IMG/VR virus record: IMGVR_UViG_3300030616_000016
Coordinates: 124,001-188,000 of that record
Length of the DNA: 64,000 bases
Direction: 5' to 3' (one strand)
Shown here one piece after another: positions 6,896-34,877 of this stretch. The notes under the pieces were generated by a model. That model did not search any database, had not been told where the DNA came from, and saw only the letters and a program-made list of their open reading frames with translations. The position numbers and the translations under genes were made by a program. Position 1 is the first letter of the stretch. Every line of letters begins with the position of its first letter.

Positions 6896-7194
6896 TCACC
6901 ATCCTCCTGTGGTTTGATAGTTATTTTGCCATCTAAACAAAAGTGTTTGCAGTTTTTTCTTCTACCTTTTATTGATTTACATAGTATATTTTTATATGCG
7001 TAGCAAACTGCAAAATAAGAAATATTCCACGCTGAAATACCCCATGCTGAAATGTCCCATGCTGAAATATTCTCTGCTGAAATATTTCTTGCTGAAATAT
7101 CCCCTGCTGAAATACTAAAACTAATATCAATGTCACAGCATATGCACACATCATCATCAATAACAGCAGTATTAGTTTTATCAACGTATTTCAA
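6892..7194 (-). CDS. Pentapeptide-like (ISAxx) repeat protein; start either TTG 7194 or ATG 7223 via -1 shift
   Basis: ISAGD ISARN ISAEN ISAWD ISAWG ISAWN (15-bp repeat); ends PQEDGE*. Confidence 0.65.
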   Translation of the reverse strand: MKYVDKTNTAVIDDDVCICCDIDISFSISAGDISARNISAENISAWDISAWGISAWNISYFAVCYAYKNILCKSIKGRRKNCKHFCLDGKITIKPQEDGE

Positions 7195-7579: not shown

Positions 7580-8800
7580 CTATGTCAATTGTTCTGGAAT
7601 AAGCTCGCTTTGATTTCTCCAATTTAGAGCTTGTTCCACTGTTTTGATATTTTGTGGTACGCATTCCATGTGCCATGTACCAATGCTTGGATTTAGCATT
7701 TTAAGATAAGGCCATTTGCCGGTCTCACCCTTCAGATCTACTACAACCAATTCATAATCTCCTTGCGTGTCCAGTGATTCAGCGCCCGTAGATTTGACAA
7801 TTCGTTCTATACCTACCTTTCTTATAAACTCCCTACGGACTTCTGCATTATCAAGTTCTGCGAATTTAGCAGGGTCAATGTCATGCTCATTCGTTTCTGC
7901 TAACCACTGCGGAACTCGTACATTATTCAAATGCCACAGTCCCCAACCGTCCGCAAATTTTACAGACATTCCTCCATCTTTATGCAGATGACTGGCTTTC
8001 CAGTTTATTTCGATTGGATTCCGACTTACAATAGCAACATTTTTATACAGTGCGCTTGAGGATATTTTTCTGTTGTAATTTAGAAATATATCATATTTTT
8101 CTTTCTCATATTTAACGCCTATATATTTCCCAAACTCGTAAACTCCGCACCAATCATTCCACCATATGTTTATATACTGCTCGGTTTTTAATTTGTTGGC
8201 ACTAAGCCTGTCACGAAGGCTGTCACGAAGGCTGTCACGAAGGCTGGCATCAAGACTGTTACGAAGACCGGCACTAAGACTATCATAAAAACTATTATGA
8301 AGACTGTCATAAAGACTGTTACGAATATTGTCATGAAGGCTGTTACGAAGACTTTTATGAAGACTGGCATAAAGACTGTCATAAAGACTGGCATAAAGTT
8401 TGTCATAAAGATTGTCATGGAGACTGTTACGAAGACTTTTACGAAGACTTTTACGAAGACTGGCATCAAGACTGTAATAAAGACTGTCATAAAGACTGGT
8501 ATAAAGTTTGTCATAAAGATTGTCATGGAGACTGTTACGAAGACTTTTATGAAGATTGTCATGAAGATTGTTATGAAGATTGTCACTAAGCAAATGTTCT
8601 GTTAGTGCTGTTGTTAATGGGCTATCACAGATTATAATTTTAATGGCATTATCTGCACCAGTCATTTTTACAATAGGCAATACTGCGTGTTTAATTTCTT
8701 CATCACTGTATTGCGCCGATATGAGGTTTAAACAGCGATTTATATGTCTTGGTATCATTTTTTCTTGTTCTTTTGTTAAACTCATAATTTCCTCTTTCAT
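7580..8800 (-). CDS. DUF6745-like protein with central tetrapeptide (LxxS/N) repeat
   Basis: LHKDGGMSVKFADGWGLWHLNNVRVP, EVRREF, YLKMLNPS, over 30 LxxS-type units. Confidence 0.7.
   Translation of the reverse strand: MKEEIMSLTKEQEKMIPRHINRCLNLISAQYSDEEIKHAVLPIVKMTGADNAIKIIICDSPLTTALTEHLLSDNLHNNLHDNLHKSLRNSLHDNLYDKLYTSLYDSLYYSLDASLRKSLRKSLRNSLHDNLYDKLYASLYDSLYASLHKSLRNSLHDNIRNSLYDSLHNSFYDSLSAGLRNSLDASLRDSLRDSLRDRLSANKLKTEQYINIWWNDWCGVYEFGKYIGVKYEKEKYDIFLNYNRKISSSALYKNVAIVSRNPIEINWKASHLHKDGGMSVKFADGWGLWHLNNVRVPQWLAETNEHDIDPAKFAELDNAEVRREFIRKVGIERIVKSTGAESLDTQGDYELVVVDLKGETGKWPYLKMLNPSIGTWHMECVPQNIKTVEQALNWRNQSELIPEQLT
8200..8590. repeat. Intragenic 12-bp tandem repeat with a higher-order 72-nt block duplicated at period 108
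   Basis: Units such as GAAGACTGTCAT/AAAGACTGTTAC; block at 8371 repeated at 8479. Confidence 0.95.
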
Positions 8801-10482: not shown

Positions 10483-11598
10483 CTATGTCAATTGTTCTGG
10501 AATAAGCTCGCTCCGATTTCTCCAATTTAGAGCTTGCCGCACTGTTTTGATATTTTGTGGCACGCATTCCATGTGCCATGTGCCAATGCTTGGATTTAGC
10601 ATTTTTAGGTACGGCCATTCGCCAGTTGTGCCTTTTAGATCAACAAGAAGTAGCTCATAATCGCCTTGTTTATCTAATGATTTAGCGCCCATAGATTTGA
10701 CAATTCTTTCAATACCTACCTTATAAATAAATTCTCTGCGAATCTCTGCATTCTTAAGCTTACTGAATTTAGCTGGATCAATATCATGTTCATTTTGCTC
10801 TGCTAACCACCGTGGTACATTTACGTTGTTAAGATGCCAAAGCCCCCAGTTATCTGCGAATCTTACGGACATCCCGCCATCTTTATGCAACTTATTGCCC
10901 TTTGAGTTTATTTCAATTGGATTACGACTTACTAATATGGTATCCCCCCATACATTACAAGAAAATATTTTTCTATTGTAATTCACGACTCGATCATATT
11001 CTTTCTGATCGTATTCTAATCCGAGGTGTTTAAATAGCTCATAACATCCAATCCCTTCAATGTTACTATAACTTATAGATGGTATTAGAGGTTCATCGCC
11101 ACGGACAATCTCTTGATAAAGATGAAATAGATCACCAGTAAAACAGGTATCCTCTTCATAATAAAGCTCAGCAAGAATCTGGAATTTGATGTTACTATGA
11201 ATATCTCTGTTAATACCATCGCTAAGTTTTGAAGACAGCATGTATTTAAGTTTGTTCATCAATGGTTCTTTCTCTTCAGCAGCCTTTTGTACTTCATACA
11301 TATTCTCAGTTATATGGCGGTATTTAATAACTAAAGCTTTTTCTCTTGGCAGCTTTGCTTCTTTGTTGCTGTTATTTTGAATATCAGGCATTTTATTCAC
11401 AATCGCCATTGGACTATCACATATAATGAGTTCAACGTCTTCAATGCTCGTATTTATTACTTCAAGCGCAACAGCCACGGCTTGTTTAATTTCATCATCA
11501 GGATATTGTTTCGTGAGCAAGCTTATGGATTTATTTGCCTGTTGTGATGCAAGTTCTAGCATTTGTTCTTCTGTAAGCTCAGACATTGAGAATTTCAT
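10483..11598 (-). CDS. DUF6745-like paralog with non-repetitive centre
   Basis: Shares IICDSP and the whole C-terminal domain with 7580-8800; last ~120 nt nearly identical. Confidence 0.75.
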   Translation of the reverse strand: MKFSMSELTEEQMLELASQQANKSISLLTKQYPDDEIKQAVAVALEVINTSIEDVELIICDSPMAIVNKMPDIQNNSNKEAKLPREKALVIKYRHITENMYEVQKAAEEKEPLMNKLKYMLSSKLSDGINRDIHSNIKFQILAELYYEEDTCFTGDLFHLYQEIVRGDEPLIPSISYSNIEGIGCYELFKHLGLEYDQKEYDRVVNYNRKIFSCNVWGDTILVSRNPIEINSKGNKLHKDGGMSVRFADNWGLWHLNNVNVPRWLAEQNEHDIDPAKFSKLKNAEIRREFIYKVGIERIVKSMGAKSLDKQGDYELLLVDLKGTTGEWPYLKMLNPSIGTWHMECVPQNIKTVRQALNWRNRSELIPEQLT

Positions 11599-11730
11599 GT
11601 ATTGTTTCCTTTATAAGCGTATTTGTTTTCCTATGTAGGCGGTTGGCCCCAAAGCCACAAACCGCCGCACTTATTCTTTCATATTCCCAGAGAGTGAATT
11701 ACCTTGTAGGAATAACCTTTGTGAGCCATA

Positions 11731-11905
11731 GAAACCTAGATTAGCCTGTAGGAAGCTGGATTGGCTTGTAAAAAGTATGTAATTACTAGATGAGCTTGTG
11801 GAAAGCTAGATTAATCTATAGAAAGTCAGATTAACTTATAAAAAGTCAGATTAACTTATAAAAAGTCAGATTAACTTATAAAAAGTCAGATTAACTTATA
11901 AAAAG
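11731..11905. repeat. 20-bp tandem repeat, perfect on the right and degenerate on the left
   Basis: AAAAGTCAGATTAACTTATA x3 plus one G-variant (11821-11900), preceded by degenerate units from 11731. Confidence 0.9.
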
Positions 11906-12305
11906 TATGGTCACTGGCTCTCTCGTGTTCAGGAATTGCTGTTTCACAACCACAATTATTACAAGTATTTGTCACATCATTGTATCCACAGAACTTACAC
12001 TTGGCATATGTCATATCTTTAAGCCCAGGACATATATATCTATCCTTTATCCACTCGGCAATAGCCAAGATAGTAGTTCCATCGTGTAGTGAGCTTACAG
12101 CAGTTAATGGCTCGTGTAGAACCTTTTGATGTAGCAGGCCCTGGATCTTGTCATCTATGATGATTTTATTTGATCTGTCCTGCGGTTTTTTGTATGTTAA
12201 GATTGCGGGGCCGTATACAAACCATTCAAATGATATTTCGTGCTCCCAGTCTATCATTATTCTTCTTCCACTCTTTATGCATTCATTAATCTCATCAAGA
12301 GTCAT
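11886..12305 (-). CDS. Accessory protein with C-terminal zinc ribbon
   Basis: CKFCGYNDVTNTCNNCGC; paralog of 2885-3316. Confidence 0.75.
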   Translation of the reverse strand: MTLDEINECIKSGRRIMIDWEHEISFEWFVYGPAILTYKKPQDRSNKIIIDDKIQGLLHQKVLHEPLTAVSSLHDGTTILAIAEWIKDRYICPGLKDMTYAKCKFCGYNDVTNTCNNCGCETAIPEHERASDHTFYKLI

Positions 12306-19294: not shown

Positions 19295-19453
19295 TTACGG
19301 AGTACCTACCTTGAAATGGGTGGTCATCCCCCGGCACCTTGGGCACCGGGAGACTTCCTTTATGTATATCTTACCGCAATTACTACACAGGGATCCTATC
19401 TTCCCCGCGTTCTCCTTCATATAATCATTAAGCTCATCTCTGAAGGACTTCAT
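19295..19453 (-). CDS. 52-aa zinc-ribbon protein (below ORF-track cutoff)
   Basis: MKSFRDELNDYMKENAGKIGSLCSNCGKIYIKEVSRCPRCRGMTTHFKVGTP*; ATGA-coupled to 19450-20034. Confidence 0.6.
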   Translation of the reverse strand: MKSFRDELNDYMKENAGKIGSLCSNCGKIYIKEVSRCPRCRGMTTHFKVGTP

Positions 19454-20034
19454 TCAGCACCTCCTTCGAAAAGCTGGTGGATCTTCTCGCTTTTTACTCT
19501 CTTGCCTGTGGTACAAGAGAATACAAAGGGCGCGCCATTTATTTCTACCTTAACATAGTGATGCTTGTTAAAGTATTTGGCCACCCTCTTGGTCACTACC
19601 TTGTGCTTGCAGTATGGCAACGATACTCTGTTGCCTTCCTTATCCAGAAGTTTCATGGTATTACCCGCCATCTTATAAAGCAGGTAATACTCTCCATTTA
19701 CCAGCTGGATAACAGGTATCTGTTTATCACCAAGTCTCTCCCGGAACTTGGTGATGCCTTCCCTCTTCTTCCCTCTTGCAAACAACTCTCTAATGCATCT
19801 GCTCGGGTCGTCACCCATGTCTGTTAACTGCTTGCTGACACGCATCTTATCGTCAGCAGTAGGTGCGGCTTGTATGGATTTGATAAATCCACTGCACACC
19901 CCGTGGGGCATACTCATTGCTGAGTATACCCCGTATTCGTTGCTGTGACGGACAAATGCCTTCTGTCTTGACAGGCGACGTATTTCAATGCGAACATTAT
20001 CTATTGTAAGAATCATTTCTTTCTCTCCTTGCAT
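19450..20034 (-). CDS. Basic hypothetical protein immediately downstream of the RNAP-like gene
   Basis: Co-oriented ORF with AAGGAG SD. Confidence 0.65.
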   Translation of the reverse strand: MQGEKEMILTIDNVRIEIRRLSRQKAFVRHSNEYGVYSAMSMPHGVCSGFIKSIQAAPTADDKMRVSKQLTDMGDDPSRCIRELFARGKKREGITKFRERLGDKQIPVIQLVNGEYYLLYKMAGNTMKLLDKEGNRVSLPYCKHKVVTKRVAKYFNKHHYVKVEINGAPFVFSCTTGKRVKSEKIHQLFEGGAE

Positions 20035-20040
20035 AAATGG

Positions 20041-22332
20041 TTAGAGGACGACCTTCTGGCCGACCATATTGAGAACTGCTTCTTCTTTGCTGACATACCA
20101 GCCAGCCTGCTTGCCGTCCTTGTGCAGCTCCACACTGTACCAGTCGGACTTACGATAAATCCGTTCTGGCTTAGCATGCACTTCCAGTTCTACTCCTTGC
20201 AGGTCACTTACTTGACCCTTGAATCCCCTCACGTCAATAAATCCATCAGGCACATAGGACTCATCAACATCAACAGCAAAGCGTGACTGGATATCACCAA
20301 TATACCTACCAAGAATGGTGATAAAGAACGTATTGCGCGTTCTAACTCCTTCATCGTTCCACCATTTCACTTTACCCTTGTCAGGCTTCTCTGACCAGGC
20401 GATGCGCATCATAGACCCGATGACATCGAGAGGGTTGTCCAGCGCTTCAACATAATCCAAGATCTCATCAGTAAGTGCTCTGAACTCATTTCTGATTTCT
20501 TTATCCTTGTCATCCGAAGTTAGCTCAGGGTCTTTCTTGATCTCGATTACATTTCTGATGGTATTGGACCTGGATTCCCATATAAACGCCCAGAGATCTT
20601 CTCCTTCTGGAGTGATATCAAACGCGTTTACATCGAACGGTGGCTTGGCCTCCATGTTTGTATCAGTGTATTTGGCCAGCTCAAGCTCATCCTGAATCTT
20701 GTCGAAGCCATTCAGGAACTTTGTCAGCTTGCATTTCTCAGCCATTTCGTAGGCCAGAAGCTTTTTAGGGAAAACTTCCGGCTTGCCATACTTATCAATC
20801 AATTTGTAGCCATATGCGACCAGATCTTTCTCGTCTTTCGATACTGGTCTGTTATCAATGACCTTGTGTTTGATATAACCAAGATCCTTGATCAACTTTG
20901 GATCGTCAAACCCATTGGTCAAAGACAGGCACTGTTGCACAAGATCAACACCGCCAATTGTGAGACCAGAATGAATGTCGATAAGCTGATGTGCAAGCTC
21001 GCGCAAGGCTTCATTCTTTGGTTTCGACAAGTCGATCTCCAGCTTCATTGGATCTTCATCGTCCAATGTTCTTTCTGGAGTCTGAGAGATATCCTGAGTC
21101 CATGAGAATGGCTTATGTTTATTTCCGTTCTCGTCTATCACAGTTAGGCCCATGACTTCAGAACTAGAGCCTATTGGTACTCTGAATGCCGCAGCTCCAC
21201 ATTCGACATACTCAGGATCGATGCCCCATATTTTCTTGAGCATCTCTGCGTTACGCGCTTTCATCTCCTCTGTGATTACGTGGAGTGTAAGTGTGTCTCC
21301 ATCACAGTCCGATGAAGTCCATCGCTCTATATTATCTATGGTCTTCTTGCTTGCAAGACCAAGGGTATACTTGTGCGTTCCAACAACCAACGCCATAAAG
21401 TCTTTCTTGCATCCTGTGAACTTTATGTTGCGCTCGTCCACCACAATGGTATTTGGCGGCAGGGTCTCATCACATATCATCATACCCTTGATGCCTTTGC
21501 CTTCATGGGCCATAGCAACACCAATCGCCATGATTTCATCATCGGAAGACTCAAGCTTGAGCTCATTTTCTTCTAGAGTCTCAGCGTCTTCTCTCCAGGC
21601 AATTGGATATGATCCGAATGCTGTTGCATACTGATTCTTCTTGTACGGCGCATCCATAAGCCTGTTCATCTCCTTATTGAACTCATAGAAGGCCACTGCG
21701 TCGTCGACTGATATCTCGAATGGGAAATGAGCCAGATTCTTGGCTACCCATTCTGGCGTGAGCCGCATATTGTCTATCTTATGCGCCCACTCGCATGTTG
21801 AAAGAACGTATGCTTTATTGAACTCGTTCTTTGTCTCTGCGGAAAGGTCGCTGCCGTAAATAGCCGTTGGATACTGCATCGGCAGCATAGACTGCTTCTG
21901 CTTATTTAAGGTTGTCCTTGCCGCTTCCTTTTTTACCTTCTTCCATACGTCTTTGCTTCCATGAATCAACCCATCTACGGTTCTAGCAATGATGACGTTG
22001 ATCGTCTTGCTATCCCAGTACGCTAACCTCCTGAGACTTTCATTAAGCATCCAAAGTATCCTTCTAAGATGCTTAACTCTTATGCGACCATCAACCATCG
22101 CCTGAGATGACTCAAACCACTTAGGTTGAGTCTTAAGGCCGAGATTATTATCGGGAACAAGGTCCCATTTGACCATATTCCAGACGATATCGTTAATGAC
22201 TTTTTCTCTGAGGCCTTTTTCTCTGCCTCTACCCACTGTCTTAGTCGACAATGACACAGGGAAATCTGCAGGCATGTCTGTCCTGCCAAGATCTCCTGCA
22301 TAGACTGTTTTGCTGCTTAACTTACACTTCAT
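20041..22332 (-). CDS. Candidate single-subunit two-barrel RNA polymerase (YonO / cellular-RdRP / crAss-like superfamily)
   Basis: GIKGMMICDETLPPNTIVVDERNIKF (K282) resembles the GxKG...I...KF segment of cellular RdRP-like enzymes. SSDCDGDTLTLH (D342-D346, nt 21309-21295) matches the DxDGD Mg-binding loop. Confidence 0.55.
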   Translation of the reverse strand: MKCKLSSKTVYAGDLGRTDMPADFPVSLSTKTVGRGREKGLREKVINDIVWNMVKWDLVPDNNLGLKTQPKWFESSQAMVDGRIRVKHLRRILWMLNESLRRLAYWDSKTINVIIARTVDGLIHGSKDVWKKVKKEAARTTLNKQKQSMLPMQYPTAIYGSDLSAETKNEFNKAYVLSTCEWAHKIDNMRLTPEWVAKNLAHFPFEISVDDAVAFYEFNKEMNRLMDAPYKKNQYATAFGSYPIAWREDAETLEENELKLESSDDEIMAIGVAMAHEGKGIKGMMICDETLPPNTIVVDERNIKFTGCKKDFMALVVGTHKYTLGLASKKTIDNIERWTSSDCDGDTLTLHVITEEMKARNAEMLKKIWGIDPEYVECGAAAFRVPIGSSSEVMGLTVIDENGNKHKPFSWTQDISQTPERTLDDEDPMKLEIDLSKPKNEALRELAHQLIDIHSGLTIGGVDLVQQCLSLTNGFDDPKLIKDLGYIKHKVIDNRPVSKDEKDLVAYGYKLIDKYGKPEVFPKKLLAYEMAEKCKLTKFLNGFDKIQDELELAKYTDTNMEAKPPFDVNAFDITPEGEDLWAFIWESRSNTIRNVIEIKKDPELTSDDKDKEIRNEFRALTDEILDYVEALDNPLDVIGSMMRIAWSEKPDKGKVKWWNDEGVRTRNTFFITILGRYIGDIQSRFAVDVDESYVPDGFIDVRGFKGQVSDLQGVELEVHAKPERIYRKSDWYSVELHKDGKQAGWYVSKEEAVLNMVGQKVVL

Positions 22333-22368
22333 ACTAATTCTCCTTAAAAGGGTGGTCTTGTTATAAGA

Positions 22369-22722: not shown

Positions 22723-22846
22723 ATCTAACTCTCCTTCTGCCCTATTGGGCAATAGCGTATATAGAAGGCCCTATATAGGCCCTTGCCTATATAAGGGGTA
22801 GTACATATACGCCCTATGTACTACCTGTTTACACTGCATATAAGGT

Positions 22847-23516: not shown

Positions 23517-23846
23517 TCACATATACACTGTTGTTTCTGGTTTATTGTGCTTGGTAAATTCATTCATCCCACCAAGCACCCTCCTTATCTGTCTGTTTGT
23601 ACCATTGCTAATCACCAGGTATACATATGACTCATGGTAGAAATCACCGTCGTAATCGTCAATAATTCTTACCTTGTACTCAACTACACGCCCGTTGCAC
23701 CATATACATCTCTGATACACATGTTCCAAGGAAGGTATATCTCTTACTACATCACCAACCACCAACCCCGTGGAGCTGTCAAAAAACTTACCTTCTACTG
23801 CTACATTGTTGCTATCTTTCACTGCATTAAGATTTGTGATCAACAT
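23517..23846 (-). CDS. Hypothetical protein, first gene of the leftward unit
   Basis: AGGAG SD. Confidence 0.6.
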   Translation of the reverse strand: MLITNLNAVKDSNNVAVEGKFFDSSTGLVVGDVVRDIPSLEHVYQRCIWCNGRVVEYKVRIIDDYDGDFYHESYVYLVISNGTNRQIRRVLGGMNEFTKHNKPETTVYM

Positions 23847-24391: not shown

Positions 24392-24949
24392 TTGGCTTGT
24401 TTATATATAGAAGCAGGAGCAAACAGAGGTAGGTCAGCAAAGCGGTTTTATAAGCAACACAAAGACATTAACTTCGAGTATCACCTTTTTGAGGCTAATC
24501 CTAATATCATTGCAGACCTTAACAGTTCAGTGGTATGTATTCAAGGCGAGCGCACTATTTATAACAAAGCCGTATGGACTGAAAATGATATTGAAATGGA
24601 AATCAAGATAGATAAGACGACCAAGGGGTCAACTATCTGTGAGAAGAGTGTTAGAGTGAATGAGACGGCGGTTACGTCCACAATAGACTTTGATGAATGG
24701 TTCAGGGCCTGTTGTAAAGAAGATGATTATATTGTCCTTGTTATTGATATAGAAGGCGCGGAATATGAAGTTCTTCCAAAGATGATTGATAACGGGTGCT
24801 TTGACATGGTAGACGAGCTTACAATCGAATTTCATGGTCATAAAATGAAGAATAAAAAATTCACATCCGATATGAATAAATTGTTTAGGGATTATTTTAA
24901 TACAATGAAGTTCAATAAGTGCGAATTGTATTTTATAGACAAAATTTGA
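24392..24949 (+). CDS. FkbM-family SAM-dependent methyltransferase
   Basis: YIEAGANRG, LFEANP, KAVW, LVIDIEGAEYEVL, ELTIEFH; AGGAGG SD, TTG start. Confidence 0.8.
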   Translation: MACLYIEAGANRGRSAKRFYKQHKDINFEYHLFEANPNIIADLNSSVVCIQGERTIYNKAVWTENDIEMEIKIDKTTKGSTICEKSVRVNETAVTSTIDFDEWFRACCKEDDYIVLVIDIEGAEYEVLPKMIDNGCFDMVDELTIEFHGHKMKNKKFTSDMNKLFRDYFNTMKFNKCELYFIDKI

Positions 24950-25518: not shown

Positions 25519-26354
25519 AGAAATTTAATATGCAGGGCGCGCTTTATAAATCAGACAAAAATCCTGAAGAGATTAAAAAGGAGATATGTAAGAACAAACC
25601 GGCAGAAGAAGAATCCAAGCCTATAGAAATGATCGAAGTAGACAACAGCAGCGAGCTTCCCAAGGAACTCGCGCCGCTTCAATCACTCGTAGATAAAATA
25701 AGCCCTGATCGAACAGTAACTTTACCAGCTGAAACCTGGAAAACACTTGCTAAGTGGGCTGTGAAAGCACGGAAAGGAGCCTCCAGAGAAGCGCCCATGC
25801 TTTGCACAAGCGAGCAATGCCCATACGCTAAACAATGCCCTCTCATTAAATCCGGCGTTAATATTGAACCATTTACAGAATGTCCTCTTGAAAGCTACCT
25901 CATGGAAGAATGGGATGAGGATATGGCCGCCAGTATTGCAGATAAACCTGGCGATAAACTTTACGCTCCAGATCTGCGCACTATTTCTCATTCAACACTT
26001 CTTGAAATCCTTATGAGAAGAACAACCATGGAACTAGCTAATGATCCAGAGGTTGTAAAAGAAGTGGTTATTGGTATAGACGAAGAAGGTAAGCCAGTCA
26101 AAGCAGAGAAGCTTAATGATAAAATAACCGCCGTCCAAAATATGATCAAAACAGAAGAGAAACTTCACGACTCTCTTCTCGCCACAAGAAAAGCAAGAGC
26201 TGCTGCAGGTGATAAACTTTCAGGCGATTCTGAAGATTATATAGAGGGCGCCGCTTCTTTTGCTGAAACAGAGGTAGCTGATGAACAACCAGACAAGAAA
26301 CGTGATGAACATTCTGAAGCGGATGGGGATACTGAAGGATCCGCCGGGTCTTAA
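25515..26354 (+). CDS. Cys-cluster protein, candidate small terminase subunit
   Basis: CTSEQCPYAKQCP...CP cluster, helical C-terminus and acidic tail, upstream of TerL; function inferred from position. Confidence 0.45.
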   Translation: MKKFNMQGALYKSDKNPEEIKKEICKNKPAEEESKPIEMIEVDNSSELPKELAPLQSLVDKISPDRTVTLPAETWKTLAKWAVKARKGASREAPMLCTSEQCPYAKQCPLIKSGVNIEPFTECPLESYLMEEWDEDMAASIADKPGDKLYAPDLRTISHSTLLEILMRRTTMELANDPEVVKEVVIGIDEEGKPVKAEKLNDKITAVQNMIKTEEKLHDSLLATRKARAAAGDKLSGDSEDYIEGAASFAETEVADEQPDKKRDEHSEADGDTEGSAGS

Positions 26355-29300
26355 ACCAAGCAAGCTTGAGAATTACGGTATAGGCCTTGTTTCAGAGGGA
26401 ATTCACAGCACAATAAATCCGCACGATCTTAAAACCCCTTTCTCCACATTCCATGTTGGTTCAGGGTACAAAGGGATAGAGTTTGATAATGTTATCAAAG
26501 CTGTCCGTATGGGTACTTATCTTGACCTTGAAACCAGAGGCCTGGATCCAAGAAAGGATCCTCCTTGGCTGGGCGCCATAGTAAGCCCAGGCGTTTCAGA
26601 GCTCAGCGAAGAGGCATATCTTGAAACCATAGGTACTCCCCTATTCAGACAAAAGCTTGATGCCGAAGGGCGTGTAGATTATGATTATCTCTCTGAAAAG
26701 CTATTCAACATAAAACCATCCCGTCCAATATTACAACCAGGCTTATCTGAAGAGGATGCCATTAAGCAGGTTATAGACAGCATGGGTCAAAGAATCAAGC
26801 CCATGGTGTATGAAGGGCGTCCTGTAGACCTCCTGAAAAGTGAAACGTTGCGGCAATTTTTGAAAACTGCCCCTGAGGCAATTAGGAACGGGACGCCTGC
26901 GCAACAAATAGCCGCGTATTTTGATCCACAACTAAATCCTTCCAATAGAGCCCTAAATGAGTTTATGCATGGTGGGGAAGGTATTTTTACTCAGGCTTCA
27001 AAAGATGTGCTTGCTATGACTGGCCAGAAAATGAGCGCTGGTGACATTGACAGAATAAGAAAGAACCTTATGAATGAGCTTCACACCGGCAAGGGATTGA
27101 ATTGGGATGACTGGTTGAAGCAGTCTTTTGATGCAGCGGATCAATCAGGCAAGACAATAATCGTTCACAACCTTCAGTTTGAATCTAGAATGGCAGCCGG
27201 CCGAACCAGCCAAACTTTCTATAACGAACTGAAAGAACGATACTTGCATTCATACAGCCAGGCCAAATCAAAATCAGACGATATATTCACGCAAAGAATA
27301 TACACTACTTCCACCGCTCTTCACAATGCCAAGTTCGAAGCGATGAGAAATTGGTCTAATGATGCCTGGGGTAATGTTTTTGATGAGTGGGCAAGGCATG
27401 CTGATCTAAAGACAAATAAGGTGAAGGTTCTTGACAGTATGGATCTTGGTCGTTCCGTGTTTGGTATGGCGCAGGAACAGCTTGGAAGAAAAGGTTTATA
27501 TAAGTGGCGTAATACACAGAGCATGGCTGGTTTAAGCTTGTCTCACTATGCAGACGCTCTTACCAGATACCACGAATCAATAGGCGATCCTCTTCCTGAT
27601 TTCCTTCGGAAGGAGCTTCACAGATCACGCGCTGATGCTCTTCTTACAGAATCATATGTAGAAGACATGCTTCAGATAGGCAGGCTGCTTAGAGAAGGTA
27701 GAGGTGGCGAGCTTAATCTTGAAAGAAATAATAGATATAGAATGATATTGGAGAGATTGGGTGAGATTAATGCCGACCCTATGACTCGACTTAATGCTGC
27801 TAGAAAGCAAGCTCTCCAGGAATTTGGTACTATTATTGGTGGTGATGAGGTAGAGATTAGAGATTGGGATCCAGATAGACCTAGAGGTCCATATCATGAA
27901 GTTACTACCATGGAGTGGGTTCCTGACGACACCAGGGAAGGTGGCTCTTTCAAACGTATGAATAGGAAGGTAAGTGATTATAAGAGAAGAAAAACAAATA
28001 GGATGGAAGAGGTCGTAGATTACCACATCAAAGGTTTTAACAAGAATCTTCGTAAAGATCTTACAGATAAGCAGATACAAAGATTTAGAGAATCTCTACT
28101 TAGTGCCGGTAGGCAGATGAAGCAGGCTTACCACACTAGGAAGCCTGGAGCTGTACAGAAGGTAGCAGAACAGCTTGAGCAGGTAGATGCCTTTAATATG
28201 GATAAGGCATTCTCTCCGGATCAAGCGAAGAGGTTTATTGGAGATATAGAGCGCAAGACATTTGCTAAGGCTACATCTCATCAGTTGGGTATGACTGGTA
28301 AGATAGGGTGGCTTACTGCAGGTATGATGGGTGGCGCTGTGCTTATGAAGTCCATGATGGGCTCTGAGGCAGAGCACTATATGAACCAGATGTATTCGAA
28401 GTACACGAAGTATGAGCAAGATCAGGGTGTATTTGAACAGGTAGATGTTCTTGCTTCGATGGGCGCAGGAGCTTTTGGTGGAGCTGTATTAGCTTCTTCT
28501 TTTGGTCCAGGAATGGAAATGACCCTGTCCAAAAGTGCTCATGAGATGATGAAGCTTAAGAATGTTGGAAGGAATTTGCCTTATATGGCAGCTGCCGGCT
28601 TAGCCTTAACATCAACACTTTATTCTCTCAAGAGTAATGTTTCTGATGTAGTTGATGCCGAGCCTACAGAAGGACATCCCTTCCAGATGGGTAGTGCGTT
28701 TCTTGGGGCGGCTGCTATGACAGGAATGGCCTATGGTCAAAGATATGGCTTTGCTCAAGACGCATTTGCAAAAAGACTGGAAGGCGAACCAAGAGCGATA
28801 GACAAACTTGCTAATCTGACTGGCCTTAGACATGGATCCGATATGCTTAGCGGTGTATCTGATCTTGTACTTCACGGCGGACGCACAGCAAGCCCAAAGA
28901 TGGACTGGGCCAGGTCCAGTATTATAGACCCCGTCACAACCAAAATCAAATCCGTTACTTCCAGCAAAGGCTTCCAATCAGTAATGGATACAATGGGTAG
29001 ATATAAGATACCGGGAGTTATTGCAGCTGGTGTTGGTATGATGTTTGGAGCCGACTATCTTTTTGGTCAGGAAGACAACGTTATTCCAGCTCAGCATATT
29101 GACAATATGGAAATAGAGGGTATGGGCGAATATGGATATTCAGGTCCTATGCGCAAGGCCAATACTCCATTTGGATCCAGAAACAATCCAGCAAAAATTA
29201 TCAAAGATGCCTGGGGTCAATTCAATGTCAGCGCGGCCAGGGCCAAACCACAAAATTACTACGCTCCTCATATTATTGAAGAGCTATACAACGTAAGCAA

Positions 29301-29973
29301 GCATAAAGATCTTATTAAGATGGATATAGCTGCTCACATGAGCGTCAAACAAGCAGAGGTTGGTGCAGACTTTGTTGATGGTTCTTATAAGAAGTGGATG
29401 GATAATACCAGCAAGACAAATCCATTAGCTCTTGAAATGACATATTTACATGACGTCGGTCTTTCTGTTCCTCAGAAAAAGGTCGACTATGGTATTAATA
29501 GCTATATGCCTGTTGGAGATATGGGTCATAGATTTGGTCCTTTTACTGCAGAAGTACCTGAGTTCGAGATGCAACTTCCTCGCGGGAAGAAAATGATTGA
29601 CCCAGATCTTTTTGAAACAAAAGGGCCTAATGGTAATATCACAAGGGTTACTGAAGCGCATCTTGCCAATGCTTCGAATGCAAATAAAAATGCGCAAGTT
29701 ACTGCAAAATATAAAGATGCAGGCAGAAGAGCTGTCAATATGGAGAACGCAAGACCTGGAGATCATCTTGGCGCACAAAACATGATGCACACAGTTCCAA
29801 GAAGAAATCCGCCAATAAATTCTAAAAGAGGTCTTGAAAGACAAGTACTTAGCGTTATAATGGATAAGGACCATGCCATCAAATCCAATATACAGGGTTA
29901 TGGCGTAAGACACTCTCGCAGAAGACCCAGAATGAGAGCGAATAGGTCTAATGGACATTTGACTGGAGTATGA
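26281..29973 (+). CDS. 1230-aa protein: DEDDh (DnaQ-like) exonuclease domain fused to Gly/Ala/Met-rich membrane-like segments
   Basis: ExoI YLDLETRGL (26518), ExoII IIVHNLQFE (27166), VLDSMDL, ExoIII HRSRAD (27619); several hydrophobic segments after residue ~670. Confidence 0.7.
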   Translation: MNNQTRNVMNILKRMGILKDPPGLKPSKLENYGIGLVSEGIHSTINPHDLKTPFSTFHVGSGYKGIEFDNVIKAVRMGTYLDLETRGLDPRKDPPWLGAIVSPGVSELSEEAYLETIGTPLFRQKLDAEGRVDYDYLSEKLFNIKPSRPILQPGLSEEDAIKQVIDSMGQRIKPMVYEGRPVDLLKSETLRQFLKTAPEAIRNGTPAQQIAAYFDPQLNPSNRALNEFMHGGEGIFTQASKDVLAMTGQKMSAGDIDRIRKNLMNELHTGKGLNWDDWLKQSFDAADQSGKTIIVHNLQFESRMAAGRTSQTFYNELKERYLHSYSQAKSKSDDIFTQRIYTTSTALHNAKFEAMRNWSNDAWGNVFDEWARHADLKTNKVKVLDSMDLGRSVFGMAQEQLGRKGLYKWRNTQSMAGLSLSHYADALTRYHESIGDPLPDFLRKELHRSRADALLTESYVEDMLQIGRLLREGRGGELNLERNNRYRMILERLGEINADPMTRLNAARKQALQEFGTIIGGDEVEIRDWDPDRPRGPYHEVTTMEWVPDDTREGGSFKRMNRKVSDYKRRKTNRMEEVVDYHIKGFNKNLRKDLTDKQIQRFRESLLSAGRQMKQAYHTRKPGAVQKVAEQLEQVDAFNMDKAFSPDQAKRFIGDIERKTFAKATSHQLGMTGKIGWLTAGMMGGAVLMKSMMGSEAEHYMNQMYSKYTKYEQDQGVFEQVDVLASMGAGAFGGAVLASSFGPGMEMTLSKSAHEMMKLKNVGRNLPYMAAAGLALTSTLYSLKSNVSDVVDAEPTEGHPFQMGSAFLGAAAMTGMAYGQRYGFAQDAFAKRLEGEPRAIDKLANLTGLRHGSDMLSGVSDLVLHGGRTASPKMDWARSSIIDPVTTKIKSVTSSKGFQSVMDTMGRYKIPGVIAAGVGMMFGADYLFGQEDNVIPAQHIDNMEIEGMGEYGYSGPMRKANTPFGSRNNPAKIIKDAWGQFNVSAARAKPQNYYAPHIIEELYNVSKHKDLIKMDIAAHMSVKQAEVGADFVDGSYKKWMDNTSKTNPLALEMTYLHDVGLSVPQKKVDYGINSYMPVGDMGHRFGPFTAEVPEFEMQLPRGKKMIDPDLFETKGPNGNITRVTEAHLANASNANKNAQVTAKYKDAGRRAVNMENARPGDHLGAQNMMHTVPRRNPPINSKRGLERQVLSVIMDKDHAIKSNIQGYGVRHSRRRPRMRANRSNGHLTGV

Positions 29974-31775: not shown

Positions 31776-34700
31776 GTGCAGATTGAAAGACCCGACCCCT
31801 ATTCTTCGGATATGTGTAAAGAATGCAAAGCGATGTACAGAAAGCTGTATGATGAAGGTAAGATAAAGAACCCATTTCCTCCTTTGTGTCGTGGAGATAG
31901 AAGACTACAAGAAGGATATATATGTGATGGCATGTCTCCTCAAGAGAAAGCCTTAGCTGTTTTATCTAATCCTTCTACATGGGCTAAATATGAACTCAAC
32001 ATAGCACCCAGGTGGTATCAGGAGACCATGCTCGCATGCTCTGCCAGACAGACAGTACTGCGATGCGGTAGACGTATAGGAAAGAGTTTTATGTTGGTAT
32101 TAAGAGCTCTTCACAACATGTCTAGAAATAAACACTATCGCGTTCTTATTGTTGCTCCATACCAGAACCAAATCAATATTCTTTTTGGTTTTATAGACAA
32201 GTTTATTTCTGATTCTAAAACCATAAAGAACAAAGTTAAAAGAAGGGTTAAATCTCCTCAACTTCTTGAATTAACCAATGGCTCATTGATACAAGGCTTT
32301 CCATCAGGTATTAACTCTGGCGGTAAGAGTGATAAGGTTCGTGGTCAAGATGCCGATGAGATTCTTATTGACGAGATTGACTATCTGCCAGACGGAGATA
32401 TCGACGCTATTGTTGCTATTCTGGCTTCAAATAAAAACACCAAGATATCAGTTTCATCTACTCCTAGTGGTAGAAAAACCAAGTATTATAAATTCTGCAC
32501 TCACAAGCAAGACGGATGGAAAGAATGGCACTTCTCTTCCATGGTTTCTCCAGAGTGGACAGAGCAGACCGAGAACATGCTACGAGGTATGTATTCAACT
32601 CTGGCATGGGAACACGAAATATGTTTGAGCGGCGATACTTTAGTAAGAACTACGCTTGCAGATAAAAAAATAAAAGACATTACCTGCGAAGATTTTGTAT
32701 ATGATAGTAACTTTAATATAGTCGAAGTTGCTAAGGGCGCCACTTATACTGGTAGGAAACAAGTTGTGAAATACACTTTACCCAATGACAGACATATAGT
32801 TTCTACACCAGACCATAGCTTTCCTAATAGGAGTTTTACCAAAACACCCATTGAAAGCCTTGATGAATTACCAGTGTATAGAGATAAAAGATATAATTCG
32901 TCTGACAGAGATGTGGTTTTAGCTAGACTTGTTGGGTACAACTTGGGCGATGGATCTTGTTGTTCGACTAGATATCAGTCAAGTTTCTACTCATCATCTT
33001 ATTCTGATATGGACAAAATAGTTAAAGACTTACATACTATTTATCCTGGCTATAAAGGGAACGTTTTGGAAGATGTTATTAATAACTCAAACAAAAAAGC
33101 CTCACTAGTTCATGTCGACGGCAAAAGATGCTCTGTTAATGTTAGTAAAAAAATTACATTGGATTTAATAAGTCATGGCGTCGTAAGAGGTAAAAAGGTA
33201 GAACAAGAATTTAATATACCAGATTTTATTGCAAGTTCCAATGATTTAGAGGTTAAGAGAGAATTTATTGCTGCTTTGTTTGGAGCGGAAGGATCTATGC
33301 CAGCTAAGGCATGCGACGACGGATATATGCCGCACACTTTATCTTTATCTATGTCTAAGCGGCGTGGGGTGTCTGCAGATGTGTTTTTTGATGGGTTGGT
33401 GAGTATATTAAAAGAATTTGGCGTAAGATCTACATGGACTTCGCATCCAGCACAATTCAAATCTGCTAATAATGGTATATGTCATAACACTGTCTATGCG
33501 CTTTATGTTCATAATAGCTTTGATAATATTTATGCTTTTTTGAATAAGGTAGGCTATAGATATTGCGATGCAAAAGAACAAGCTGCGTTTAATATTAAAT
33601 GCTATCTTGAGTGCTATGATTATGCCTTAAAAGCCAAGAGGAATCGATTTGAGTATGCTCGAATATTAAAAGATAAGAAGTTGAGTCATAAAGAAATAAG
33701 CAAGAGAACGCGCTTAAGTCTTGCGCAAATCAGCAAAGCTATTGCGGGTCGCATTCCAAAGAGATTTTATAATGAATTTCCCAAATTGGATGACTGGCTG
33801 AAGTATAATGTCGTTGGCTCCGGTGTATTCATGCCAATAGTAAAACGCAGAAAATTACCTAAGCCTATTGATGTATACAATATAACAGTTGGATCACACG
33901 ACCATTCATACATATTGGGGAACGATACAAGGACTTTTAATTGCGCAGAATTTGGCCAGTTTGAAGAAGGTGCCTTTCCAACCAAAAAGCTTGTTGAAAG
34001 CATGCAGTCTTATACATATGCTCAATGTTCCAGGAAGCCAAATTGCATTTATTCAATGGGCGTTGACTGGAATGAGCATCCAATTGGCGTTCATATGGTT
34101 GTTGTTGAATATGATCCTGAATATGGCCAGTTTAAAGTTGTAGACAAAAAGATATCTAACGACAAGGAATTTACTCAAACTAAAGCAGTAGAAGACATCA
34201 TTACAACATATAGAACGTGGATGCCAGATTGGCTATGGGCTGATGCCGGCGCCGGTGGATATCAAATTGAAACTTTGAAGAGAGTTGCAAACGCTAAACC
34301 TGATCTTAGATTAAGAAAGAAGATACGTGGTGTGGTTATGCATGAGAAAGAGATAATCAAAGATCCTATAACAAAGCGTGATGTAAAGAAACAGGCGAAG
34401 GCATTGATGGTTGATTTATGTGTGCGACGAGTAGAGATTGGTCAGTGTATATTTCCAAGAATTGAAGATGATGAAAACATGTTAGTAGACCAAATCAGAA
34501 ACTTCAAGGTAGAGAGGTTTACTCCTAATGGTATTCCTGTCTACTCTCAGGGCAAAGACCATACTGCAGTTGCATGGATGGTCGCTATGTATGCCATACT
34601 TCTTAATCGCACGGATATTAAGAATGTCAAACATTGCAAGAATGTTGGTTCTGTTCCAATATACAATTCCATTACAGGAGCATCGACCACAACAAGATCC

Positions 34701-34877
34701 AGATCAATATCAAATGAGATTATAGGCTCAAGAGAAATTAAGACCAAACAGGATGTTCAGATAGAGAGTTTTCGTAAAGTATCGCAACCACAAAGAAGAA
34801 AGCACGTAGCTCATATTGAATTAAGACGCGGCGTTGTTTCATCAAAGCGTGCTATCGCAAACAGATCAAGGATATAA
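31776..34877 (+). CDS. terL: Terminase large subunit (with intein)
   Basis: Walker A CGRRIGKS, Walker B ILIDEID, SSTPSG, nuclease MGVDWN and GKDH; spliced length 593 aa. Confidence 0.95.
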   Translation: MQIERPDPYSSDMCKECKAMYRKLYDEGKIKNPFPPLCRGDRRLQEGYICDGMSPQEKALAVLSNPSTWAKYELNIAPRWYQETMLACSARQTVLRCGRRIGKSFMLVLRALHNMSRNKHYRVLIVAPYQNQINILFGFIDKFISDSKTIKNKVKRRVKSPQLLELTNGSLIQGFPSGINSGGKSDKVRGQDADEILIDEIDYLPDGDIDAIVAILASNKNTKISVSSTPSGRKTKYYKFCTHKQDGWKEWHFSSMVSPEWTEQTENMLRGMYSTLAWEHEICLSGDTLVRTTLADKKIKDITCEDFVYDSNFNIVEVAKGATYTGRKQVVKYTLPNDRHIVSTPDHSFPNRSFTKTPIESLDELPVYRDKRYNSSDRDVVLARLVGYNLGDGSCCSTRYQSSFYSSSYSDMDKIVKDLHTIYPGYKGNVLEDVINNSNKKASLVHVDGKRCSVNVSKKITLDLISHGVVRGKKVEQEFNIPDFIASSNDLEVKREFIAALFGAEGSMPAKACDDGYMPHTLSLSMSKRRGVSADVFFDGLVSILKEFGVRSTWTSHPAQFKSANNGICHNTVYALYVHNSFDNIYAFLNKVGYRYCDAKEQAAFNIKCYLECYDYALKAKRNRFEYARILKDKKLSHKEISKRTRLSLAQISKAIAGRIPKRFYNEFPKLDDWLKYNVVGSGVFMPIVKRRKLPKPIDVYNITVGSHDHSYILGNDTRTFNCAEFGQFEEGAFPTKKLVESMQSYTYAQCSRKPNCIYSMGVDWNEHPIGVHMVVVEYDPEYGQFKVVDKKISNDKEFTQTKAVEDIITTYRTWMPDWLWADAGAGGYQIETLKRVANAKPDLRLRKKIRGVVMHEKEIIKDPITKRDVKKQAKALMVDLCVRRVEIGQCIFPRIEDDENMLVDQIRNFKVERFTPNGIPVYSQGKDHTAVAWMVAMYAILLNRTDIKNVKHCKNVGSVPIYNSITGASTTTRSRSISNEIIGSREIKTKQDVQIESFRKVSQPQRRKHVAHIELRRGVVSSKRAIANRSRI
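32622..33941 (+). mobile_element. 440-aa intein with LAGLIDADG endonuclease in TerL
   Basis: HEI|CLSGDT, block B STPDH, LVGYNLGDGS and FIAALFGAEGS, ends TRTFN|C. Confidence 0.9.

What the first reader, a model, noticed from the sequence alone, without database searches (positions are those of the whole stretch)
20041..22332. 763-aa early-region protein with KG...KF and DCDGD motifs: candidate minimal non-virion RNA polymerase
Seen: GIKGMMICDETLPPNTIVVDERNIKF (K282), followed only ~60 aa later by ERWTSSDCDGDTLTLH (D342-D346). It is by far the largest gene of the GC-richer leftward module and sits near its start. Known: cellular RdRP-like and YonO-type single-chain two-barrel polymerases combine a GxKG...I...KF segment with a DxDGD loop. 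Inference: a very compact phage RNAP. The short KG-to-DxDGD spacing is unusual and could mark a new minimal subfamily, or a false match.
Basis: partly seen in the sequence, partly recalled or inferred. Interest (0 to 1): 0.85.

Follow-up and report, generated by a model that had tools for sequence, protein, structure and literature searches.

The report
Orphan jumbo-phage protein, doubtful RNA polymerase
A real 763-residue early gene of an uncultured 231-kb phage carries a conserved acidic DxDGD loop that faintly resembles the catalytic loop of RNA polymerases, but the other polymerase hallmarks are missing or untestable, and the phage already encodes a conventional RNA polymerase elsewhere.

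Summary
The ORF (20041-22332, minus strand, 763 aa, AAGGAG ribosome site) and both motif strings are there as described. The protein is an extreme orphan. It has no Pfam, PHROG, NCBIfam, PADLOC, PDB or GenBank-phage hit, and only two distant relatives (21-24% identity) among 1.84 billion representative proteins. All three lie in syntenic early regions of related phages.

Invariant in the family are GKGxK (278-282), GTH (318-320), the three Asp of DxDGD (342-346) and RxP (384-386). One relative has a one-residue-shorter loop (ADGDDH).

AlphaFold2 failed twice (pLDDT 35 and 41), so the fold test could not be run.

Profile tests give weak but consistent support that the ~25 residues around DxDGD resemble barrel A of YonO-like, gp64 and β′ families (z 2.5-2.9, against 4.2-5.8 for true pairs). 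A second barrel gets no support. The invariant RxP upstream of DxDGD is absent. The language-model RdRP hit was not reproduced with the relative.

Walking the contig found canonical β′-like and β-like RNAP genes 36 kb away.

Verdict: a real, fast-evolving orphan, probably a metal-dependent enzyme. Probability that it is a two-barrel polymerase: about 0.3.

The parts
20041..22332 (-). 763-aa ORF (the stop codon is 20041-20043). It belongs to an orphan family with two distant relatives, P0001 (750 aa) and P0002 (736 aa).
22340..22345 (-). Shine-Dalgarno AAGGAG, 7 nt upstream of the ATG at 22332.
   Evidence: D8/D14: the same TTTTAAGGAGAA context occurs at three leftward genes
21487..21501 (-). 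Invariant basic glycine loop G278-K279-G280-I-K282.
21373..21381 (-). Invariant G318-T319-H320. It lies where two-barrel RNAPs would carry RxP(x)(L)H, but the Arg and Pro are absent.
21295..21309 (-). Acidic loop D342-C-D344-G-D346 followed by the strand-like TLTLHV. This is the candidate metal-binding site.
21175..21183 (-). Invariant R384-V-P386, downstream of the acidic loop. In the compact relatives the Pro lies 17-19 aa after the last Asp, comparable to the 16 aa in gp64's invariant GGLY(M/R)P.
20848..20955 (-). Conserved block G460..(D/N)463..Q467 ... I492-D493-x-R495. By eye it resembles the G..N / D..K block of YonO, QDE-1 and gp64, with the same G-to-D spacing (33 against 32-37). The resemblance is not statistically supported.
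20044..20265 (-). C-terminal conserved segment (about residues 690-763; Y693-x-P695, V718-H719, W731, D739-G740-x-Q742-x-G744-W745). Only chance-level SH3 and GW hints.
19450..20034 (-). 194-aa ORF that starts 6 nt after the stop of the 763-aa gene and is probably co-transcribed. No family hit.
22769..22796 (-). 12-bp hairpin (CCTTATATAGG...CCTATATAGGG) 440 nt upstream of the gene. It looks like a terminator and is not a recurrent element.

Best explanation
The gene is real and is probably expressed early. It encodes a rapidly evolving orphan protein.

Its most likely function is a divalent-metal-dependent phosphoryl- or nucleotidyl-transfer enzyme whose fold current tools cannot recognise. 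On this reading it is not the phage's transcribing RNA polymerase.

Inferred mechanism:
- The invariant aspartates of the 342-346 loop chelate Mg2+ or Mn2+.
- The invariant basic residues (K279, K282, R384, R495) and H320 bind substrate phosphates.
- Largely helical N- and C-terminal regions and a small C-terminal module provide target binding.

What is shown: the gene, its ribosome site, its synteny, the pattern of conservation, and the presence of a canonical RNAP elsewhere in the genome.

What is inferred: catalysis, metal binding and the substrate.
For: - Intact ORF with a strong ribosome-binding site, tightly followed by the next gene.
- Full-length relatives sit in syntenic early regions of two related phages.
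- The invariant residues are dominated by Asp/Glu, Lys/Arg, Gly and two His. No Ser or Cys is invariant. That suits a metal- and phosphate-binding site rather than a Ser/Cys hydrolase.
- No detectable relationship to any curated family or solved structure.
- Polymerase hallmarks other than the acidic loop are missing.
- The same genome carries a canonical pair 36 kb downstream on the same strand. The 508-aa β′-N-like protein has FRNPLLH and GADSDGD. The 555-aa β-C-like protein has PF00562 and GDKITNRHGNKG.
Against: - There is no positive evidence for any particular alternative fold or chemistry.
- The only specific similarity found anywhere is to barrel A of two-barrel RNAPs.
- The DxDGD segment is not a conservation peak of the family. 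The peaks are 471-520, 651-680 and 731-760.
- The gene is the most divergent shared gene between the related phages: 21-22% identity, against 35-70% for its neighbours. That pattern is also typical of non-enzymatic host-interaction proteins.
Confidence: 0.4

Rival explanations
1. The protein is an extremely diverged member of the two-barrel (double-psi β-barrel) polymerase superfamily, either YonO/gp64-like or β′-like. D342/D344/D346 would be the Mg2+ triad of barrel A and K279/K282 would contact the NTP or RNA 3' end. It would be an extra, early non-virion polymerase alongside the phage's canonical multisubunit enzyme.
For: - SSDCDGDTLTLH has the loop-then-strand context of β′ ADFDGDQMAVH, YonO FDNDGDKALII and gp64 ADYDGDIGYVF.
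- Native flanks score above DxDGD-fixed shuffles against the YonO-like profile (5/100 and 3/100 shuffles reach them; with the connector deleted, 1/80).
- Native flanks score above a grafted-motif natural-window null against YonO-like (1/37), gp64 (0/37) and β′ (1/32) profiles, z 2.5-2.9.
- True two-barrel families themselves give only E about 0.01 and probability 4% with profiles this thin. Non-significance is therefore not a refutation.
- gp64 has its two barrel-B basic residues 3 apart (RAWKG), as in KGIKG.
- A Pro lies 16-19 aa after the loop, as in gp64.
- ESM-Atlas neighbours of the query and of its core (235-440) are PF05183 clusters, score 0.89.
- P23-45 gp64 was first proposed from DxDxD alone and later proved active (PMC10770324).
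Against: - RxP upstream of DxDGD is absent in all three members. It is one of the eight residues invariant in every two-barrel RNAP (PMC2919709).
- P0001 and P0125 have DGDD, which breaks the DxDxD spacing.
- No barrel B can be located. The KG segment scores below shuffles, and the unbiased scan places barrel-B targets inconsistently.
- K282 to D342 is 60 aa, against 177 aa in gp64 and 264 aa in YonO and QDE-1.
- Positive controls give z 4.2-5.8 where this protein gives 1.2-3.0.
- The Atlas signal disappears for P0001.
- No Pfam or PDB hit, even at E<=10.
- The genome already has a canonical RNAP.
Confidence: 0.3
2. The protein is a non-catalytic early protein, a host-takeover or anti-defence binder. 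The acidic loop would be structural or bind Ca2+, and rapid divergence would reflect an arms race with the host.
For: - It is the most divergent of all shared genes between the three related phages: 21-22% identity, against 35-50% for small early ORFs and 52-70% for the structural-side neighbours.
- It sits in an early module made almost entirely of orphans, with YopX, pentapeptide-repeat and DUF6745 proteins.
- Conservation is spread evenly and not focused on the acidic loop.
- One member tolerates a deletion inside the loop.
Against: - The invariant G-K-G-x-K, G-T-H, Asp triad and R-x-P clusters look like an active site.
- The loop does not fit an EF-hand. Position 6 is not Gly and position 12 is not Glu (inspection).
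- No hit to any PADLOC family.
Confidence: 0.25
3. The ORF is not a functional gene. It would be a chance ORF or a decaying pseudogene.
For: No family hit anywhere.
Against: - A 2.3-kb open frame with a consensus ribosome-binding site.
- Full-length homologues in three phage lineages at 21-24% identity, with conserved motifs and conserved synteny.
Confidence: 0.03

Closest known systems
YonO of Bacillus prophage SPβ and YonO-like phage proteins (PF05183 RdRP family)
   Same: - Single chain of similar size (763 aa against about 830-920 aa) in a phage.
- A DxDGD loop preceded by small or polar residues and followed by a β-strand-like segment.
- Weak flank similarity around that loop.
- Fast evolution is noted for YonO-likes (PMC2919709).
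   Different: - YonO-likes have invariant D249-G, R266....K271-G and R492-x-P494, with 264 aa between the KG and DxDGD.
- Here RxP is absent, the glycine of 'KG' is not conserved, the spacing is 60 aa, and barrel B gives no profile signal.
- The YonO-like profile reaches QDE-1 in PDB at E 0.002. This family reaches nothing.
P23-45 gp64 non-virion RNAP (616 aa; experimentally active, structure solved)
   Same: - A compact early phage protein that was first suspected from DxDxD alone.
- Basic pair 3 residues apart (RAWKG against KGIKG).
- A Pro about 16-19 aa after the acidic loop.
- Flank similarity above the grafted-motif null, 0/37.
   Different: - gp64 keeps FGDG, NRRP and 177 aa between barrel-B Lys and DYDGD.
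- Full-length hhalign of the two families finds nothing.
- Shuffle tests give z 1.2-1.8, against 4.4-4.8 for gp64 compared with YonO.
β′-N-like subunits of split jumbo-phage multisubunit RNAPs, including this phage's own 508-aa protein (L032:10245-11771)
   Same: - Jumbo-phage context.
- ...GKG... about 60-80 aa before a DxDGD loop. The phage's own protein has YSGKGHIAT about 80 aa before GADSDGD; here the distance is 63 aa.
- Flank similarity to a β′ barrel-A profile, 1/32.
   Different: - The phage's own β′-like protein is detectable with E. coli RpoC (E 4e-4) and keeps FRNPLLH.
- The 763-aa protein shows no similarity to it, to RpoC or to six phage β′-like fragments.
- It lacks RxP.
QDE-1 and eukaryotic cellular RdRPs
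   Same: - Motif-level resemblance: [small][small]S-D-x-D-G-D.
- Nearest ESM-Atlas clusters.
   Different: - No HMM or profile hit.
- The Atlas score is below the tool's 0.9 reliability line and is not reproduced by the homologue.

Membership tests
Two-barrel (double-psi β-barrel) RNA polymerase superfamily | Invariant DxDxD Mg2+-binding loop in barrel A | tested here: inconclusive
   Present in the query (DCDGD) and in P0002 (DMDGD). P0001 and P0125 have D-G-D-D, one residue shorter.
Two-barrel (double-psi β-barrel) RNA polymerase superfamily | Invariant R-x-P about 36-43 aa upstream of DxDxD (Rpb1 R446/P448; QDE-1 R962/P964) | tested here: not met
   None of the three members has a conserved RxP in the 60 aa upstream. 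G-T-H occupies that place. RxP is present in YonO-likes, gp64, QDE-1, β′ and this phage's own β′-like protein.
Two-barrel (double-psi β-barrel) RNA polymerase superfamily | Barrel B with one invariant Asp and two invariant basic residues (QDE-1 D709, R738, K743) | tested here: inconclusive
   - K279 and K282 are invariant, and an acidic residue at 266 is conserved.
- The segment scores below shuffled controls against YonO barrel B (80/100).
- Sliding scans place barrel-B targets at 61-190 or 411-520, not here.
Two-barrel (double-psi β-barrel) RNA polymerase superfamily | Two double-psi β-barrel folds forming the active site | tested here: inconclusive
   AlphaFold2 gave pLDDT 35 (full length) and 41 (core). 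The ESM Atlas model has pTM 0.27. Foldseek against PDB found no hit at E<=0.001.
Two-barrel (double-psi β-barrel) RNA polymerase superfamily | Detectable sequence or profile similarity to a known member beyond the pentapeptide | tested here: inconclusive
   - No significant hit from hhalign, Pfam or PDB.
- About 25 residues around DxDGD score above grafted-motif nulls against three families, z 2.5-2.9, where true pairs give 4.2-5.8.
Two-barrel (double-psi β-barrel) RNA polymerase superfamily | Template-dependent RNA synthesis abolished by mutating the Asp triad | not testable with these tools
   This is a biochemical assay. The precedent is YonO 3D>3N (PMC5467207).
YonO / PF05183 RdRP family | Match to the family model, and the architecture barrel B - long connector (140-220 aa) - barrel A | tested here: not met
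   - No PF05183 hit at E<=10 for the full length or for core fragments.
- Only 35 aa lie between K282 and G318.
- The Atlas PF05183 neighbours are only a lead and are not reproduced with P0001.
β′-N-like subunit of split jumbo-phage multisubunit RNAP | Similarity to β′ residues about 315-464, including RxPxLH and NADFDGD | tested here: not met
   tblastn and blastp with E. coli RpoC, six phage β′-like fragments and the phage's own 508-aa β′-like protein found nothing. That 508-aa protein does meet the criterion.
   By inspection, position 6 is Thr/Ser, not Gly, and position 12 is Ile/Gly, not Glu. No EF-hand Pfam hit.
Toprim domain (primase, topoisomerase, OLD) | Conserved Glu at the end of a hydrophobic strand, plus DxD immediately after a hydrophobic strand; a Pfam Toprim model hit | tested here: not met
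   No Toprim family hit at E<=10. The DxD is preceded by polar residues (WTSS, DGA), not by a hydrophobic strand. The E266-to-D342 spacing of 76 aa resembles GyrB only from my memory of GyrB.

The most novel reading that the evidence does not exclude
The protein is a new family of two-barrel polymerase. Its barrel A lacks the otherwise universal RxP, and there is no clamp connector: either both barrels are packed within about 160 residues, or a single β′-type barrel begins at the GKG strand. It would serve as a third, early RNA polymerase in a jumbo phage that also carries a canonical split multisubunit RNAP.
Probability: 0.25. Interest if true: 0.8.

Novelty: new variant of a known kind. Interest (0 to 1): 0.35.

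Why it matters
If the polymerase reading were true, three things would follow.
- The known limits of two-barrel RNAP architecture would widen: no RxP, no connector, and a tolerated DxDD variant.
- A phage would be shown to combine a canonical multisubunit RNAP with a minimal single-chain one.
- That bears on how small an RNAP active site can be and on the evolution of transcription enzymes.

If it is not a polymerase, it is still a conserved, fast-evolving, enzyme-like orphan. It sits at the head of the early region of a barely sampled jumbo-phage lineage, with three sequence clusters among about 15 billion proteins. That makes it a reasonable but unprioritised target for functional work.

In practice, the finding shows that a DxDGD pentapeptide, even with language-model neighbours, is not sufficient evidence for an RNAP.

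Tried and rejected
Searches of curated libraries and collections, all empty:
- Pfam, PHROGs, NCBIfam and PADLOC on the query, its relatives and core fragments.
- tblastn against GenBank phages.
- Word-index homologue searches with the protein and with alignment A1.
- PDB phmmer and hmmsearch with the protein, A1 and core alignment A4.

Attempts to enlarge the family:
- Scans of viral, metagenome and genome contigs with A1 found only the contig itself or nothing.
- Scans for relatives of the conserved neighbours, to find more syntenic phages, also found only the contig itself.

Structure:
- AlphaFold2 was run on the full length and on the core. Both models are unusable.
- Foldseek on the core model was meaningless, as expected.

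Profile comparisons:
- Full-length hhalign against close YonO (A2), diverse YonO-like (A3) and gp64 (A8) profiles gave nothing, or only the DxDGD segment.
- A 'bridge-helix-like' resemblance I saw by eye (VGxxNL...IDxR against NIGEISN...IDYAK, with the same 33-aa spacing) did not beat shuffles (31/100) and did not rank first in the sliding scan.

Alternative folds considered by eye and rejected:
- Archaeo-eukaryotic primase: the motif order and the His are not conserved in the query.
- KxDG ligase or capping motif: present in the relatives but not in the query.
- Toprim, Pol-β nucleotidyltransferase and GT-A DxD: the acidic residues do not follow a hydrophobic strand.
- EF-hand, P-loop and protein-kinase motifs.

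Other:
- The upstream CCTATATAGG hairpin is not recurrent, so it is not a phage-specific promoter element.
- The 109-aa ORF with DDYDGD (23517-23846) has no homologue in the related phage and is treated as chance.
Full report
**1. The observation**

The ORF at 20041-22332 on the minus strand is intact. It starts with ATG and encodes 763 aa.

The ATG is preceded at 7 nt by AAGGAG, within a TTTTAAGGAGAA context shared with two other leftward genes. The next ORF starts 6 nt after the stop.

It is the largest ORF of the leftward module. It begins 1.5 kb from the divergent intergenic region and lies in the GC-richer 14-22 kb stretch.

The pentapeptide alone is not remarkable. It is expected 0.028 times in a protein of this composition and occurs three times in the six-frame translation of the window.

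**2. The phage**

The rightward module encodes terminase, portal, protease, major capsid protein and tail sheath. No nucleotide or protein match exists in GenBank phages.

The window is part of a 231,647-bp viral contig, IMGVR_UViG_3300030616_000016. It is therefore an uncultured jumbo myovirus-like phage.

The leftward module is almost entirely orphan ORFs. It includes YopX, a pentapeptide-repeat protein, two DUF6745 paralogues and zinc ribbons.

**3. An extreme orphan**

- No Pfam, PHROG, NCBIfam, PADLOC or PDB hit, even at permissive thresholds and with core fragments.
- An exhaustive HMMER search of 1.84 billion representatives found only two relatives: P0001 (750 aa, E 6e-15, 24% identity, full length) and P0002 (736 aa, E 4e-9).
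- Their 90% clusters hold two members and one member, all unnamed.
- Further scans of viral, metagenome and genome contigs added nothing.

Both relatives sit in related phages.
- On P0001's 78.7-kb contig the gene is likewise divergent from orthologues of the 279-aa, 1230-aa and 258-aa proteins and the terminase (52-70% identity).
- P0002 is followed by orthologues of three window early genes, in the same order (35-49% identity).
- The large protein itself is only 21-22% identical. It is the fastest-evolving shared gene.

**4. What the family conserves (A1)**

Invariant:
- G278-K279-G280-x-K282
- G318-T319-H320
- D342, D344, D346
- R384-x-P386
- G460...Q467
- I492-D493-x-R495
- a WND/RT block near 659-665
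- a C-terminal W...DGxQxGW

No Ser or Cys is invariant.

P0001, and its variant P0125 from a separate contig, have ADGDDH. That is one residue shorter than DxDGD.

Conservation is spread evenly at 11.8% invariant columns. The acidic loop is not its peak.

**5. The fold test failed**

AlphaFold2 on the three-sequence alignment gave mean pLDDT 35 and pTM 0.27. On the core (residues 225-440) it gave 41 and 0.36. The ESM Atlas model has pTM 0.27. Foldseek on the core model returned nothing at E<=0.001.

**6. The language-model lead**

ESM-Atlas feature neighbours of the whole protein, and of residues 235-440 alone, are overwhelmingly PF05183 (RdRP/YonO-type) clusters. Several are phage clusters of about 705 aa. 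The score is 0.89, under the tool's 0.9 line.

I then tested P0001, which lacks the canonical pentapeptide. Its neighbours are CDC45/DHH clusters at 0.83, a chance-level score, and no RdRP cluster appears. The signal for the query is thus most probably driven by the string SSDCDGD. It is not independent evidence.

**7. Profile tests with controls**

I built three comparison profiles.
- A YonO-like profile (A3) from SPβ YonO, four 24-51% identical phage homologues and five other YonO homologues from the protein collection.
- A gp64 profile (A8) from five Thermus phages.
- A β′ barrel-A profile from E. coli and six jumbo-phage β′-like proteins.

Defining residues were taken from PMC2919709 and confirmed in these alignments.
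- Barrel B: D-G, then R..K-G.
- Barrel A: R-x-P, 36-43 aa before DxDGD.
- After the barrels: a G..N / D..K block, which the YonO-like profile also matches in QDE-1 (E 0.002).

Results:
- Full-length hhalign of our family against these profiles gave nothing, or only the DxDGD segment.
- Two genuine families (YonO-like against gp64) reach only E 0.0096 and probability 4%. Non-significance with such thin profiles is therefore weak evidence.
- With DxDGD held fixed and the flanks shuffled, ours against YonO barrel A gives z 2.3 (5/100). A connector-deleted chain gives z 3.0 (1/80). Ours against gp64 gives z 1.8 and 1.2. The gp64-YonO control gives z 4.8 and 4.4.
- Against a stricter null, the motif was grafted into other natural windows of the same alignment. 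The native context scores z 2.5 (1/37) against YonO, 2.7 (0/37) against gp64 and 2.9 (1/32) against β′. Controls give 4.2-5.8.
- The paired residues are about 12 before and 6 after the loop, plus the downstream (R)MP against gp64's LY(M/R)P.
- The proposed barrel-B segment scores below shuffles (80/100). The downstream block is at chance (31/100). In an unbiased sliding scan, barrel-B targets map to 61-190 (YonO) or 411-520 (gp64), inconsistently and never to 236-310.

**8. Architecture**

K282 to D342 is 60 aa. The corresponding distance is 177 aa in gp64 and 264 aa in YonO and QDE-1.

From the known strand order of the double-psi barrel, the remainder of barrel B plus the first five strands of barrel A need roughly 100 aa. 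This rests on established knowledge and was not tested here.

There is a by-eye alternative. GKG could be the first strand of a single β′-type barrel. Compare YSGKGHIAT about 80 aa before GADSDGD in this phage's own β′-like protein. That would fit the spacing, but hhalign does not support it.

**9. Genome context beyond the window**

Walking the ENA copy of the contig (k141_1275754) past the window's left edge revealed two adjacent genes on the same strand, 36 kb downstream.
- A 508-aa protein matches E. coli RpoC residues 315-464 (E 4e-4) and phage β′-like fragments. It has FRNPLLH and GADSDGDLIETV.
- A 555-aa protein has PF00562 and GDKITNRHGNKG, and matches RpoB residues 997-1125 (E 1e-8).

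The phage thus has a canonical split multisubunit RNAP that retains every hallmark the 763-aa protein lacks. The 763-aa protein shows no similarity to it. No β, β′, YonO or gp64 homologue lies in the window.

**10. Weighing**

For a two-barrel relative:
- the conserved Asp loop with the right local context;
- weak but threefold-consistent flank similarity;
- the basic GKGxK loop;
- size and early position;
- the precedent of gp64.

Against:
- no RxP;
- DGDD in one lineage;
- no second barrel;
- far too short spacing;
- control-calibrated signals about half those of true pairs;
- the language-model hit not reproduced;
- a canonical RNAP already present.

My estimates are:
- about 0.3 for a two-barrel polymerase relative;
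- 0.4 for another metal-dependent phosphoryl- or nucleotidyl-transfer enzyme of unrecognised fold;
- 0.25 for a non-catalytic, fast-evolving early protein;
- 0.03 for a non-gene.

**11. Novelty and verdict**

The family is undescribed and very rare. The interpretation cannot be decided with these tools and leans negative in its specific form (KG...KF as barrel B; the phage's non-virion RNAP).

It is a modest lead that only biochemistry or a structure can resolve.

Noticed in passing
L032:10245-13431 (ENA k141_1275754 about 123,968-127,154; about 18 kb beyond the window's left edge, same strand as the finding): Adjacent canonical RNAP genes. One is a 508-aa β′-N-like protein (FRNPLLH, GADSDGD; RpoC 315-464, E 4e-4). 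The other is a 555-aa β-C-like protein (PF00562; GDKITNRHGNKG). The phage therefore has a split multisubunit RNAP. The other fragments were not found in the 36 kb walked.
   Followed up: partly
window 31776-34877 (+): The large terminase is 1033 aa. A roughly 423-aa insertion (residues about 301-723) interrupts the gp17-like ATPase, with boundaries ...KDIT|C... and ...TFN|C.... It is absent from the 70%-identical orthologue on L001, so it is probably an intein with a homing endonuclease.
   Followed up: partly
window 26281-29973 (+): A 1230-aa protein lies between the early region and the terminase. It is 54% identical in the related phage and has no Pfam, PHROG or PDB hit. It has a long Gly/Ala/Met-rich, hydrophobic middle part. 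It is a second large orphan conserved in this lineage.
   Followed up: partly
window 53403-58841 (+) and 58.9 kb to the right end: An 1812-aa ORF downstream of the sheath and tube genes has only a weak Intein_splicing hit (E 0.0015). Beyond it, no + strand ORF of 70 aa or more is listed up to the window end. A very long ORF may therefore run off the edge.
   Followed up: no
window 37320-40316 (+): The portal ORF is 998 aa. The portal match covers residues 56-354, followed by a match (residues 352-430) to part of PHROG 85, which is labelled thymidylate synthase. This may be another inserted element.
   Followed up: no
window 11718-11906: A tandem array of 20-nt units (AGATTAACTTATAAAAAGTC-like) sits in the intergenic region between the 371-aa and 139-aa genes. 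It looks iteron-like.
   Followed up: no
window 7580-8800 and 10483-11598 (-): Two paralogous DUF6745 proteins (406 and 371 aa; 300 nt at their 3' (C-terminal) ends are 82% identical). The first contains a 12-nt-period repeat at 8161-8616. 15-nt-period repeats lie at 6028-6135 (the pentapeptide-repeat gene) and at 7004-7123.
   Followed up: no
window 23517-23846 (-): The first ORF of the leftward module (109 aa) contains IIDDYDGDFYHE, a second DxDGD. It has no homologue on the related contig L001 and is treated as chance.
   Followed up: partly
window 20041-22332 compared with its neighbours (L001, L003, L004): There is a strong rate contrast. The 763-aa protein is 21-22% identical between related phages, whereas neighbouring genes are 35-70% identical.
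   Followed up: yes
L030-L033 (beyond the window's left edge): The leftward gene array continues with several recognisable genes: a GerE-type HTH protein, DUF488, an MqsR-toxin-like protein, NAPRTase, Band_7, a PP2C phosphatase next to a faint protein-kinase hit, peptidase S41, a TnpB/IS605 OrfB gene (388 aa), an HD-domain protein and a DEAD/ResIII helicase.
   Followed up: no
window 24392-24949 (+): The first rightward gene is an FkbM-family methyltransferase (PF05050, E 1e-7).
   Followed up: no
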